Below are positions 14,801 through 17,800 of a stretch of 33,800 nt of DNA, in pieces; positions within the stretch are counted from its first letter, which is position 1, and the number at the start of each line of letters is the position of its first letter. A program made the translations under genes and the position numbers. The notes beneath the pieces were generated by a model. The model was not told the origin of the DNA, ran no database searches, and was given only the letters and a program-made list of their open reading frames with translations. This DNA is from Macrostomum lignano (taxonomy: Eukaryota). The DNA lies in contig NIVC01003658.1 in NCBI GenBank assembly GCA_002269645.1, positions 1 through 33,800 of the forward strand, in the 5' to 3' direction.

Positions 14801-17800
14801 TCCACAGAATGTGAGGCTTGGGGCAAGAGGATTGCAAATGAAAACGAACGAAGCGATGGTCAGACAGAGACTCCTCTTCGTCCCACACCTCCTAGTCCTT
14901 GACTAAAGGAGCCAAGCCATGGGAGACGAGGGTAACGTCGAGGGCCTCCGTCCATCGCCCGTTGTCAAAGGTGGGGGTTCCACCAATGTTGCAAAACTCA
15001 GTGTTGGTGGTGCAGATGTAAGCAAGGAGTTCCTCGCCTCTGCTATTGGAAGTATTACTGCCCCAGTGGGTGTGGTGAGCGTTGATGTCGCCCGCCACCA
15101 GCAGCTCGAACCTACGGTTAGAGCAGTAGTCCACGAGGGAGGTGAGGTTGGGTGGAACCGCGGGGCCATCGCCAGGGATATAAATCGAGGCGATTATGAC
15201 CGTGCGGTTGGTGATAATGTGGTTGGACTGAATGACACAGAGATCTCTGTCAGAGAGGTCCGGTCTGTGCCAAGCTTTGAGATGGGTAGACACGAACATG
15301 GCTGCTCTGGGGTTTTGAGGGTCCTGAAAACAGTCAAAACCAGCAGGAATATTCGGAATCTTACCTTTCTTTGTCCAGGGCTCATGGAGTAGGATGATGC
15401 CCGGTTTCGCAAAGTTTGCCACCCGCATCAGGTTGGTCGAGGCCGCGATGCAGTGGTGTAGGTTTAGCTGCAGGATGTCCACTCCGGGGATTCCACGAGT
15501 GGTTCGCGCAGCTTCTTGCCGGCTCAAGGCGAGTTGTGCAGGAGAGCTGCCTCTTCTGCCTCGCCGATAGCTTCAGACTCCAGCTCCATGGGCTCCTCCC
15601 GGATGGATCCATGGTCGAGGGCAATGTCGCTGCCTGGGCGGCATTCTCGCTCTCGGCCTGGTTTTCCGGGGGGGGCGCAGTGGTGACACTGGGCTGGCGG
15701 TGGCTGCGGTTGGGGGCCTTGGCGGTGTCCAGCAGCTGCTTCGCGCGCTGAGTCAGACCAGAGCGGATAGTGTTCCGGGCGGGTTTCCGGCCCTTTCCAC
15801 GTCCGCCTGTTGCTGCAGCTTTCGCGGCTTTCCCTCTGACGGGGTCCACGTCCTCGGAGGGGTCGTGACGGCCGGGAGCTTCTTTTCCTGGGCGTTTCCG
15901 CCCGGCAGAGCCCCCGACAGCCCGCTTACGCTTCTCCGGGGGCGGTGGGCGGGTGGCGTCAGACTCAAAGCTAAAGAGCTGAATCTGCAACAGCCCGACA
16001 GAGATGATGGACATGTCCGGGTAGCGGAGCATCCAGCTATCCGACAGTCCAAGAATAGCCGTGAAACCGTCTCCGCCCGGCTTGGAGATGGTCTCGTGAA
16101 CTACGACACCGTTTGCCGGTAGCTCCGGGTTGGAAGCCACTAGCAGGTGACGCAGCTCGTCGGCCTTGGTGATGCAGCTGCGAGCCGGGATCCAGGCACG
16201 GTGCCGGTGTGTCCGGGGTCGCTCGTCCTCCCTGTAGATGAACAGGTTCTCCAGCTCCGTACCCCAGTCGAAGGTTTTCAGCAGCTCGAGGAGCTGCTGT
16301 CCTGACTGGCTGTCGGCGGGCTGGATATGGAGGGCTTGGTCCTCGACTTTCGTCTTTTGGACTCGAATAGTAGTGCCGCTCAAGGCCATCTTGACCAGGT
16401 GGGAGTCCAACCTGCGCCAGATAAGGTCGAGCTGTTCGGCCGTAAGAGGCGTCTCCTGGCCTTGGATAACCAGGGCCGGCTGCCTCTTGGCCATAGCCGC
16501 GTAGGTTCGCTTTGGCTTTGTGGTTTGGCCAGCGCCCCCCGCTTTGGATCCCTCCACAGCCGTGGGAGCTACCACACGGGCAGAGGTCCGGTCACGGGAG
16601 GGGCCAGCCGCACCAGGAGCTTCGGCGGCACCTGACGCATCAGACCGGCGCGCGGGGTCCACCCCCTTGTCGGATGTCGGCTCCTCCGCGGGGTTCGCAG
16701 AGTTACCGGCACCCTCCTCAGAGGTGGCCGGAGGGGCGGCTTTCGCATTCCTCCGTTCCTCCGCTTTGCGCTGGAGAAAGGCTTTGTAGCGAGCAATGCT
16801 ACGGGCCTTCTTTTTCGAAATCTGAGGTCCGCTGTCTTGTCCAGCCACTCCGGTATTATCCTGAGCGGCGGCAGCGGCAGATTGAGAGGCACCGGGGGTT
16901 CCGGTGTTGCGAATGTCCGGCTGGGCCGCGGTGCCAACCTCGGTTGGTGCTCGAGCAGCCTCGGACGTGTCGGAGGTAAATGAATACTCCATGAGTCGCT
17001 GAAAGGCGAGTGGGGACTAGAGGTGAGAAGCCGCTGGGCCGTAACCCCAAACCCAACAACCAGGCCAAGAGGTAGCGACCGGGGGGTGGCTTAAGCCCGT
17101 ACCGGCCCGACCGCTAGCAACCGAGAAACTCCCCGGCTAAGAGCCCGGCTTGGAGAAACCAGAGGCCGAACCAAAGGACCATCAGCGCGGTACTACACTG
17201 GGCCCTTGGGGAAGCAGGAGGACTGCCTCCGGAGCCTGCGGACTGGCCGCATACCCTGTTAAGGTCAGAGGGTGATACCTGTTCCTCAGAGCCGTGGCCA
17301 GAGGTACCTGATACGCACAGGTTCACTTCCGGGCCAAAAGGCCACGGATGGGTTGCCGCCGCCGGAGCCCAGTCAGTCCAGCAGCCCTAGGGCTGCCTTG
17401 AACACATGCGGGGCGCGAACCCCTGGGTCGGCTTGCGAGTCAGCTTGGAGAGAGTTCTCCTGCCATTCCTGCACCAGAATAGAGGGGGTGCAGGTGTGTA
17501 GGATCGCAGACCTTAGCTCGTAGGCCTAGTCTGTCTCATGCTACACAGGCATGCTATACCCGCCATTGCATGCTGGAGGCCAGCACAAAAGCTGCAGTTG
17601 CTGACCGACACAGAAGCAGAAAATGTATCCCTAATAGAAATTAAATACTTTTAGGCTGATTGTTGCGATAATTTTAGCTCAGGTGTCTACAGACTGGCGC
17701 TCATAAATCATATTGAAAATATTCTGCCACTTTGAATCTACTACCAGCGTAATAAATACTTTGCTCTACTCTGCTAATCTCATCACAGGTATTAACTGGG

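What the first reader, a model, noticed from the sequence alone, without database searches (positions are those of the whole stretch)
17368..17573. Candidate HDV/CPEB3-like ribozyme whose cleavage site coincides with the 5' end of the full-length LINE
Seen (minus strand): P1 G1CAUGC (17573-17568) pairs with GCAUGU (17409-17404) with a G1-U wobble; J1/2 of about 140 nt holds hairpins (CCUGCACC/GGUGCAGG, GGAGA/UCUCC); P2 CCCAG (17427-17423)/CUGGG (17372-17368); P3 GGG/CCC closing L3 UUCGCGC (17419-17413); GU at 17403-17402 for P1.1; P4 GCAGCC(CUAG)GGCUGC; J4/2 C-U-G-A with putative catalytic C at 17376. All elements occur in the nested double-pseudoknot order, and G1 is the first base inside the 13-bp TSD. 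Established: HDV-like ribozymes process the 5' ends of R2 and some other non-LTR elements; the CPEB3 ribozyme has L3 UUCACGU and one C-G plus a U-U in P1.1. Inference: this family frees its 5' end by self-cleavage from read-through transcripts. Caveats: P1 is 6 bp rather than 7, and a second GCAUGC at 17554-17549 can compete for pairing.
Basis: partly seen in the sequence, partly recalled or inferred. Interest (0 to 1): 0.85.

Follow-up and report, generated by a model that had tools for sequence, protein, structure and literature searches.

The report
HDV-like ribozyme heading a flatworm LINE
The first 206 bases of a jumping gene (LINE) in a Macrostomum flatworm genome fold like the known hepatitis-delta-type self-cutting RNA, with the predicted cut exactly at the element's first base; a diverged relative keeps the same fold, so this looks like a real but unsurprising new example of a known trick for trimming a LINE transcript.

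Summary
G17573 is the first base inside an exact 13-bp target-site duplication, and a paralogous empty site in the same window confirms the insertion boundary.

A loose HDV-type descriptor is common on its own, with about 5 cores in 67.6 kb. A match whose P1 starts at the element's first base is rare: 1 of 20,000 anchored shuffles.

A diverged full-length relative, Logan contig L001, has 50% ORF1 identity and 80% RT-region identity. It starts at the homologous base and keeps the whole nested double pseudoknot. Nine of the 22 alignable pairs differ between the two copies, and all nine are standard pairs in L001. Five of them changed on both sides. P4 has a different sequence but is still a hairpin.

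J1/2 is a closed, structured domain like the activating P1.2 domains of large HDV-like ribozymes.

No Rfam family matches, cleavage is untested, and only two sequences could be obtained.

Verdict: a probable HDV-like ribozyme at the 5' end of an APE-RT-RNase H LINE of Macrostomum lignano. It is a new member of a known kind.

The parts
11692..17573 (-). LINE of 5882 bp with complete ends. It holds a 5' UTR, ORF1 (16992-15382), and ORF2 pieces for APE (15527-14892), RT (14459-13257) and RNase H (13085-11787) in different frames. It ends in a (CTAAGT)n tail.
   Evidence: the RT piece is 97-100% identical to a Macrostomum lignano protein
17574..17586 (.). Target-site duplication TGGAGGCCAGCAC, copy at the element's 5' end. 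The other copy is at 11679-11691.
   Evidence: empty paralogous site near 26340-26412
11679..11691 (.). Target-site duplication, copy next to the element's 3' tail.
17568..17573 (-). P1 5' strand GCAUGC. The predicted scissile bond is 5' of G17573, which is element nt 1.
   Evidence: (P1 is part of the MFE fold)
17428..17567 (-). J1/2 peripheral domain of 140 nt. It is a closed multi-helix structure whose closing helix (P1.2) pairs 17563-17558 with 17440-17435.
   Evidence: (z = -3.1); the closing helix covaries with L001
17423..17427 (-). P2 5' strand CCCAG.
17410..17422 (-). P3 (GGG/CCC) closing L3 UUCGCGC. L3 has U at position 1 and C-G at positions 5-6.
17404..17409 (-). P1 3' strand GCAUGU.
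17402..17403 (-). P1.1 partners. G17403 pairs with C17417. U17402 faces U17418 and is not a standard pair.
17380..17397 (-). P4 hairpin G.U + GCAGCC(CUAG)GGCUGC, preceded by J1.1/4 UCAA (17401-17398).
17373..17379 (-). J4/2 GGACUGA. The putative catalytic C is at 17376, three bases before P2'.
17368..17372 (-). P2 3' strand CUGGG, the 3' end of the ribozyme at element nt 206.
16993..17367 (-). Remainder of the 5' UTR (375 nt), with sequence blocks conserved in L001. Its function is unknown and it may support cap-independent translation.

Best explanation
Element nt 1-206 (window 17573-17368, minus strand) encode a large HDV-like self-cleaving ribozyme at the 5' end of an APE-RT-RNase H LINE of Macrostomum lignano.

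Proposed mechanism: in any transcript that enters the element from upstream, the RNA folds into the nested double pseudoknot. P1 stacks on P1.1 and P4, and P2 stacks on P3. The 140-nt J1/2 folds on its own into a closed domain whose closing helix holds the far ends of P1 and P2 together. The cytosine at 17376 in J4/2, acting with Mg2+, then cuts the bond 5' of G17573.

The released RNA starts at the element's first base with a 5'-OH. Because both strands of P1 lie inside the element, every full-length cDNA copy carries a complete ribozyme.

What is shown: the anatomy, its coincidence with the TSD boundary, and its conservation with compensatory changes in a diverged relative.

What is inferred: catalysis, the read-through substrate, and any role of the cleaved fold or the downstream UTR in uncapped translation. 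An internal promoter that also starts at nt 1 is not excluded and could coexist with the ribozyme, as it does in L1Tc.
For: (1) All elements occur in the correct order at the stated coordinates.

(2) G1 abuts an exact 13-bp TSD, and a paralogous empty site confirms the boundary.

(3) An anchored descriptor hit is rare by chance: 1 of 20,000 shuffles for the window (CNRA) and 9 of 20,000 for L001 (CNRN).

(4) L001 is an intact full-length relative with 50% ORF1 identity and 80% RT-region identity. It begins at the homologous base.

(5) L001 keeps every helix:
- P1: GCCUGC/GCAGGC against GCAUGC/GCAUGU. A3-U became C3-G, and G1.U became G1-C.
- P2: CUCAGA/UCUGAG against CCCAG/CUGGG. C-G became U-A, and a paired A/U insertion was added.
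- P1.1: C-G became U-A, and U.U became C-G.
- P3: unchanged.
- P4: 7 bp against 11 bp, with unrelated sequence.
- P1.2: two pairs changed on both sides and two on one side.

(6) Standard pairs number 28 of 29 in the window and 37 of 37 in L001. With the 3' partners slid by 1-3 positions, the counts fall to 8-12 of 29 and 11-18 of 37.

(7) All 9 pairs that differ between the copies remain standard pairs in L001. The composition-based chance of that is about 4e-4.

(8) In L001 the P1 strands are reverse complements and not direct repeats. What is conserved is therefore pairing, not a repeated word.

(9) L3 keeps U at position 1 and C-G at positions 5-6 in both copies. The candidate catalytic C sits three bases before P2' in both.

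(10) The MFE fold of the 206 nt contains P1, P3, P4 and a closed J1/2 domain. The J1/2 domain is more stable than its shuffles, with z = -3.1 and -2.0.

(11) The literature covers the unusual features:
- P1 of 6-7 bp and J1/2 of hundreds of nt occur in active R2 ribozymes (PMC3774820).
- Structured J1/2 domains activate large HDV-like ribozymes (PMC4908430).
- HDV-like ribozymes process the 5' ends of R2, R4, Dong, Baggins, RTE and L1Tc (PMC3774820, PMC6765202).
Against: - No cleavage data exist.
- Only two sequences could be obtained, so the covariation rests on one comparison.
- No Rfam HDV-type family matches even at E <= 10, whether on the whole region or on the core alone.
- The window copy has only one standard pair in P1.1 and a 6-bp P1.
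- L001 departs from the usual consensus at two places: G1-C instead of G1.U, and J4/2 CUGC instead of CNRA.
- The descriptor parameters were fixed after seeing the candidate.
- This copy is antisense to its host gene and has a broken ORF2, so it may not be expressed in a useful way.
- More distant LINE relatives showed no such fold, although most of those contigs lack their 5' ends.
Confidence: 0.75

Rival explanations
1. The conserved HDV-like fold is a structural RNA module that no longer cleaves, or never did. It could bind the element's proteins or recruit ribosomes. The precise 5' end would come from an internal promoter that starts at nt 1.
For: The fold is conserved, but catalytic competence is untested. 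L001 departs from consensus at G1-C and at J4/2 CUGC. Blocks of primary sequence in J1/2 are more conserved than pairing alone requires. In R2, the ribozyme region also binds R2 protein and is proposed to act like an IRES, and L1Tc combines a promoter with a ribozyme (PMC6765202, PMC3383444).
Against: The features retained are the ones tied to catalysis: the C three bases before P2', the U and C-G positions of L3, P1.1, and P1 starting exactly at nt 1. A purely structural role would not need P1 to begin at the first base.
Confidence: 0.13
2. The match is a chance resemblance in a GC-rich, structured 5' UTR. Similarity to L001 would reflect promoter or UTR conservation and not a ribozyme.
For: The loose descriptor matches about once per 15 kb. 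No Rfam match was found. Only two sequences are available.
Against: The anchored chance rate is 5e-5 to 4.5e-4. All 9 differing pairs stay paired, five through changes on both sides. P4 is replaced by a different hairpin at the same place. Slid-partner controls fall to about one third paired.
Confidence: 0.08
3. The ribozyme is real but uses the second GCAUGC (17554-17549) as P1 in this copy. It would then cut 19 nt inside the element.
For: The same 3' strand can pair with either GCAUGC, and the descriptor reports both.
Against: The second site is absent from L001. In the MFE fold it is buried in the J1/2 domain, while nt 1-6 form P1. The TSD and the start of L001 both place the element's end at nt 1.
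Confidence: 0.04

Closest known systems
R2 retrotransposon HDV-like ribozymes (Drosophila, Bombyx and other animals)
   Same: The double-pseudoknot ribozyme sits at the 5' end of a non-LTR element and releases it from a co-transcript. P1 is typically 6 or 7 bp, J1/2 loops run to hundreds of nt, and P4 is variable (PMC3774820).
   Different: R2 uses a restriction-like endonuclease, has a single ORF, and inserts site-specifically in 28S rDNA, often with 28S sequence forming part of P1. Here the element has an APE endonuclease, two ORFs plus RNase H, and a non-rDNA target with a 13-bp TSD. Both P1 strands lie inside the element.
drz-Agam-2-1 and other large HDV-like ribozymes with a structured J1/2 (P1.2) domain
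   Same: A stable helix-closed domain between P1 and P2 is proposed to 'pinch' the two helices together and speed catalysis (PMC4908430). Here a covarying closing helix sits 4 nt after P1 and 7 nt before P2.
   Different: The domain here is a multi-branched structure of 140-164 nt with conserved sequence blocks, not a single stem. There is no sequence similarity by Rfam search.
L1TcRz / Pr77 of Trypanosoma cruzi L1Tc (ingi clade)
   Same: An HDV-like ribozyme occupies the very first bases of an APE-RT-RNase H LINE that is not site-specific, with cleavage at element nt 1. The same region doubles as an internal promoter (PMC3185411, PMC3383444).
   Different: L1TcRz is compact (77 nt) and comes from a protist with polycistronic transcription. 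Here the ribozyme is 206 nt, comes from a flatworm, and promoter activity is unknown.
Baggins (LOA-type), RTE, R4 and Dong element ribozymes
   Same: [quoted passage not shown]
   Different: These are other hosts (insects, nematodes) and other clades. I could not read the primary paper (Ruminski et al. 2011), so detailed comparison was not possible.
Mammalian CPEB3 ribozyme
   Different: It is an intronic, single-copy, compact ribozyme with a 7-bp P1 and no J1/2 domain. There is no Rfam match, so this is a resemblance and not membership.
Twister-variant ribozymes at the 5' end of Perere-3 (RTE) in Schistosoma mansoni
   Same: This is the flatworm precedent for a LINE whose 5' end, next to the TSD, is a self-cleaving ribozyme (PMC8501958).
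   Different: It is a different ribozyme class (twister), and its P1 5' strand comes from the TSD and flank. Here the fold is HDV-like and lies wholly within the element.

Membership tests
HDV-like self-cleaving ribozymes (structural class) | Nested double pseudoknot in the order P1, J1/2, P2, P3, L3, P3', P1', P1.1, P4, J4/2, P2' | tested here: met
   Read directly. Found by my own descriptor in the window and in L001.
HDV-like self-cleaving ribozymes (structural class) | P1 of about 7 bp that starts with G at the cleavage site | tested here: met
   P1 is 6 bp and starts with G, as G1.U in the window and G1-C in L001. Six or 7 bp is typical in R2 ribozymes (PMC3774820).
HDV-like self-cleaving ribozymes (structural class) | 3-bp P3 closing a 7-8 nt L3 with U at the first position and G near the end (the U.G reverse wobble of the active site; requirement from my own knowledge) | tested here: met
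   GGG/CCC closes UUCGCGC in the window and UCUCCGU in L001. Both have U at position 1, C at 5 and G at 6.
HDV-like self-cleaving ribozymes (structural class) | Two-pair P1.1 between L3 and the bases just after P1' | tested here: inconclusive
   The window has one C-G plus U.U. L001 has U-A and C-G. The change between them is compensatory.
HDV-like self-cleaving ribozymes (structural class) | Catalytic C in J4/2 three bases before P2' (the CNRA consensus of published descriptors, from my own knowledge) | tested here: met
   The window has CUGA with the C at 17376. L001 has CUGC, so the C and its spacing are kept but the last A is not.
HDV-like self-cleaving ribozymes (structural class) | Helices supported by compensatory substitutions among homologues | tested here: met
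   Nine of 22 alignable pairs differ between the copies and all nine are standard pairs in L001, five of them changed on both sides. The slid controls collapse. Only two sequences are available.
HDV-like self-cleaving ribozymes (structural class) | Mg2+-dependent self-scission that gives a 5'-OH product | not testable with these tools
   This needs in vitro transcription and end mapping.
Rfam HDV-type families (HDV ribozyme, CPEB3 ribozyme, mosquito drz and other curated models) | Match to the family covariance model | tested here: not met
   There were no hits at gathering score on the window. No HDV-type hit appeared at E <= 10 on 17200-17750, on the core 17360-17432, or on L001 160-245. These models are lineage-specific and cannot encode the pseudoknots or a 140-nt insertion.
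5'-terminal ribozymes of non-LTR retrotransposons (functional class) | Predicted cleavage site coincides with the first base of full-length elements | tested here: met
   An exact TSD and an empty paralogous site define the boundary. L001 begins at the homologous base.
5'-terminal ribozymes of non-LTR retrotransposons (functional class) | Element transcribed as part of a longer co-transcript | not testable with these tools
   No RNA data are available. This copy is antisense to its host gene.
APE-type LINE with RNase H (I / LOA / ingi-like architecture) | ORF1 followed by an ORF2 with APE, RT and RNase H domains, plus a TSD and a simple-repeat tail | tested here: met
   L001 has an intact 1232-aa ORF2. 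The tail is (CTAAGT)n. The exact clade was not assigned because no reference LINE set was available.

The most novel reading that the evidence does not exclude
The 140-164 nt J1/2 insert is more than a spacer. It would be a conserved, multi-helix control module built into the ribozyme that also serves a second function. That function could be an internal promoter at the DNA level, as in L1Tc Pr77, or a binding site for the element's proteins that gates self-cleavage. This would make it a naturally 'allosteric' large HDV-like ribozyme, and the first HDV-like ribozyme described in a non-R2 LINE of flatworms.
Probability: 0.25. Interest if true: 0.6.

Novelty: new member of a known kind. Interest (0 to 1): 0.45.

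Why it matters
If the RNA cleaves, 5'-end processing by HDV-like ribozymes extends to an APE-RT-RNase H LINE family of free-living flatworms. Macrostomum lignano is a genetic model with transgenesis. The only flatworm LINE ribozymes I found described in the held literature are twister variants in Schistosoma, plus R2-type elements.

The element also offers a natural large ribozyme with a conserved, structured J1/2 domain. That domain could be used to test the published 'pinch' model. It could also be used to ask whether promoter, ribozyme and translation signals are packed into one 5' UTR.

In practical terms, the ribozyme marks the true 5' end of full-length copies, which helps transposon annotation in a very repeat-rich genome.

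It does not change the general picture, because 5'-terminal HDV-like ribozymes in LINEs have been known since 2010-2011.

Tried and rejected
- **Rfam.** I searched at gathering score on the whole window and at E <= 10 on the region, on the core alone and on the L001 core. Only noise appeared, such as miRNA, sRNA and CRISPR-repeat models hitting the P4 hairpin.
- **More family members.**
  - The exact ORF1 and the M. lignano UniRef proteins are not on record as contigs.
  - An ORF1-core profile search gave only two short contigs. One of them, L034, has no ribozyme region.
  - The closest ORF2 relative, P0007, has no DNA held and is 5'-truncated.
- **Metagenome scans.** The ORF1-based scan found no relatives. 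The DNA-pattern scan gave 28 hits, and none resembles the UTR by blastn.
- **Distant LINE relatives.** Loci L002-L005 and L035-L037 have 29-37% ORF2 identity. No credible HDV-like fold was found in them, but most lack their 5' ends, so this says little.
- **Alignment.** MAFFT misplaces P4 and P2' in the 3' core. I therefore tabulated pairs from explicit coordinates instead of using count of structure pairs.
- **Literature.** Webb et al. 2009 and Ruminski et al. 2011 are not held. The CNRA and L3 consensus requirements therefore rest on my own knowledge.
- **Rejected idea.** I considered that P1/P1' is just a repeated palindromic word. In L001 the two strands are reverse complements and not repeats, so this does not hold.
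Full report
**Observation**

- P1: GCAUGC at 17573-17568 pairs with GCAUGU at 17409-17404, with G1.U at the base.
- P2: CCCAG at 17427-17423 pairs with CUGGG at 17372-17368.
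- P3: GGG/CCC closes L3 UUCGCGC at 17419-17413.
- P1.1: GU at 17403-17402.
- P4: GCAGCC(CUAG)GGCUGC.
- J4/2: ends in CUGA, with the C at 17376.

The order is the one required for the nested double pseudoknot.

The LINE occupies 11692-17573. It is flanked by an exact 13-bp duplication, TGGAGGCCAGCAC, that cannot be extended on either side. The window also holds a diverged tandem duplicate of the surrounding host DNA. Its segment 25801-26754 aligns to both flanks and carries a single copy of the target with no LINE. G17573 is therefore the first base of the insertion.

**The element and its source**

The element has a 581-nt 5' UTR and an ORF1 of 536 aa with no Pfam match. APE, RT and RNase H domains follow, spread over three frames, and the element ends in a (CTAAGT)n tail. 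It is complete at both ends, but ORF2 is broken.

The RT piece is 97-100% identical to stretches of a Macrostomum lignano UniRef protein, and the ORF1 relatives are also from M. lignano. The window therefore comes from this flatworm or a very close relative.

**Is the match more than chance?**

I wrote a descriptor with these requirements:
- P1 of 6-7 bp
- J1/2 up to 200 nt
- P2 of 5 bp
- P3 of 3 bp
- L3 of 7-8 nt starting with U
- at least one P1.1 pair
- a P4 stem
- J4/2 of the form CNRA

On both strands of the window it finds about five distinct cores, one of which is the candidate. A match somewhere is therefore not evidence.

The relevant question is whether a match starts at the independently defined first base. 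I kept nt 1-6 fixed and shuffled the rest of the UTR while preserving dinucleotides. An anchored match then appeared in 1 of 20,000 shuffles with CNRA and 3 of 20,000 with CNRN. The descriptor was fixed after I had seen the candidate, so these are rough figures.

**A second, diverged element**

Logan contig L001 (6492 nt) carries an intact relative. Its ORF1 is 50% identical to the window's. Its ORF2 is a single 1232-aa frame, 80% identical in the RT region. The contig's first base aligns with G17573. Its 3' end runs 540 nt past the element's tail.

Whether L001 is a transcript or a graph break, a second element ends at the same base. My descriptor hits L001 at nt 1 and at no other start in its first 600 nt. 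The hit uses CNRN, which occurs in 9 of 20,000 anchored shuffles.

Pair by pair, the two copies compare as follows:

| Helix | Window | L001 | Change |
|---|---|---|---|
| P1 | GCAUGC/GCAUGU | GCCUGC/GCAGGC | A-U to C-G; G.U to G-C |
| P2 | CCCAG/CUGGG | CUCAGA/UCUGAG | C-G to U-A; one extra pair from matched insertions on both strands |
| P3 | GGG/CCC | GGG/CCC | none |
| P1.1 | C-G and U.U | U-A and C-G | both pairs changed on both sides |
| P4 | 7 bp | 11 bp | unrelated sequence, same position |

Standard pairs number 28 of 29 in the window and 37 of 37 in L001. With the 3' partners slid by 1-3 positions, the counts fall to 8-12 of 29 and 11-18 of 37.

Of the 22 positionally alignable pairs, 9 differ between the copies, and all 9 are standard pairs in L001. 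Five of them changed on both sides. A composition-based estimate of that happening by chance is about 4e-4.

In L001 the two P1 strands are reverse complements and not repeats. This rules out the idea that the palindromic GCAUGC is merely a repeated word. The competing GCAUGC at 17554 has no counterpart in L001.

Unpaired positions tied to catalysis are also kept. L3 has U at position 1 and C-G at positions 5-6 in both copies. The candidate catalytic C lies three bases before P2' in both, as CUGA in the window and CUGC in L001.

**The long J1/2**

The 140 nt between P1 and P2 fold into a closed, multi-branched domain. Its energy is -54.1 kcal/mol, with z = -3.1 against shuffles. L001's 164 nt fold into the same architecture.

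The closing helix is GCGGGU/ACUCGC in the window and GCAGGGCGC/GCGCUCUGC in L001. It begins 4 nt after P1 and ends 7 nt before P2. Two of its pairs changed on both sides and two on one side. The MFE fold of the whole 206 nt contains P1, P3, P4 and this domain.

This matches the published picture of large HDV-like ribozymes, in which a stable J1/2 (P1.2) domain brings P1 and P2 together and accelerates cleavage by up to about three orders of magnitude (PMC4908430). In R2 ribozymes, J1/2 loops of 216-498 nt, P1-P1' separations from 23 to over 700 nt, and P1 stems 'typically 6 or 7 bp' are documented (PMC3774820).

**Evidence against**

- No Rfam family of the HDV type matches, even at E <= 10 on the isolated cores. 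Those models are lineage-specific and cannot represent the pseudoknots or a large insertion, so this excludes membership of those curated families and not the fold class.
- I obtained only two sequences.
- Both metagenome scans failed.
- More distant LINEs mostly lack their 5' ends.
- L001 departs from the usual consensus at G1-C and at the last base of J4/2. The window copy has a weak P1.1.
- Cleavage has not been tested.

**Mechanism and context**

The best reading is a 5'-terminal HDV-like ribozyme that trims any transcript entering from upstream to the element's first base. This is what R2, R4, Dong, Baggins, RTE and L1Tc elements do (PMC3774820, PMC6765202, PMC3185411). Because both P1 strands are internal, each new full-length copy inherits a working ribozyme whatever its flank.

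The cleaved RNA would be uncapped. The retained fold, or the 375 nt of partly conserved UTR downstream, may support translation, as proposed for R2 and L1Tc (PMC6765202). That last point is inference.

This particular copy lies antisense within an intron of a plus-strand Cys-loop receptor gene. The gene's ligand-binding-domain exon ORFs are at 9245-9694 and, in the duplicate, 25107-25550. Host read-through would therefore not produce sense RNA from this copy. An internal promoter in the conserved first ~100 nt may coexist with the ribozyme, as in L1Tc Pr77 (PMC3383444).

**Novelty**

I found no paper in the held library that links Macrostomum to ribozymes. In flatworms, the described LINE 5' ribozymes are twister variants of Perere-3 in Schistosoma (PMC8501958), and a Schmidtea R2 was among the elements in the R2 ribozyme survey (PMC3774820).

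This is therefore a new member of a well-known kind. It is credible and useful for annotation and for studying J1/2 domains, but it would not surprise a specialist.

I flagged it in entry 4. The strings are untested, are not used here, and should be disregarded. In this report, comparison with the viral ribozyme is by named features only.

Noticed in passing
window 9245-9694, 21344-21799, 25107-25550, about 31208-31507 (+ strand): A Cys-loop (neurotransmitter-gated) ion-channel gene is tandemly duplicated within the window. Pfam Neur_chan_LBD scores 1e-21 on both ligand-binding-domain exon ORFs. The LINE lies antisense in an intron of the first copy, and the second copy provides the empty site near 26340-26412.
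   Followed up: partly
window 1-4095 (+) and 4106-4809 (-): A second LINE of the same architecture (APE, RT) is about 70% identical in nucleotides to the studied one. Its 5' end lies off the window, and an inverted APE fragment abuts it.
   Followed up: partly
window 16993-17367 (-); L001 238-547; L036 about 135-150: The 5' UTR downstream of the ribozyme keeps conserved blocks between the window and L001 (CAGGTACCTCT, CCCAGTGT, TAAGCCACCCCC). CCCAGTGTA recurs in the UTR of a much more distant LINE (L036). The function is unknown.
   Followed up: no
window 26995-27690; 10442-10880; 32456-32735: There are three tandem arrays: 9-nt TCAGAGACA x 77.6, a 35-nt unit x 12.7, and a 94-nt unit x 3. The first two lie in the duplicated host introns near the LINE site or the empty site.
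   Followed up: no
window 30004-30065 / 30598-30657 and 5962-6126 / 8385-8546: Two pairs of inverted repeats may be the termini of DNA transposons or foldback elements. One has 30 nt perfect arms ending in C10/G10, about 590 nt apart. The other has arms of about 165 nt, 87-88% complementary, about 2.3 kb apart.
   Followed up: no
L001 1 and 5954-6492: The Logan contig begins exactly at the element's first base but runs 540 nt beyond its 3' tail. This is what a 5'-processed, 3' read-through transcript would look like. I could not determine the library type of ERR14788467.
   Followed up: no
window 11692-11707 (-); L001 about 5944-5954: The LINE's 3' tail is a hexamer repeat (CTAAGT)n, with 2.7 units in the window and one unit in L001, instead of poly(A).
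   Followed up: partly
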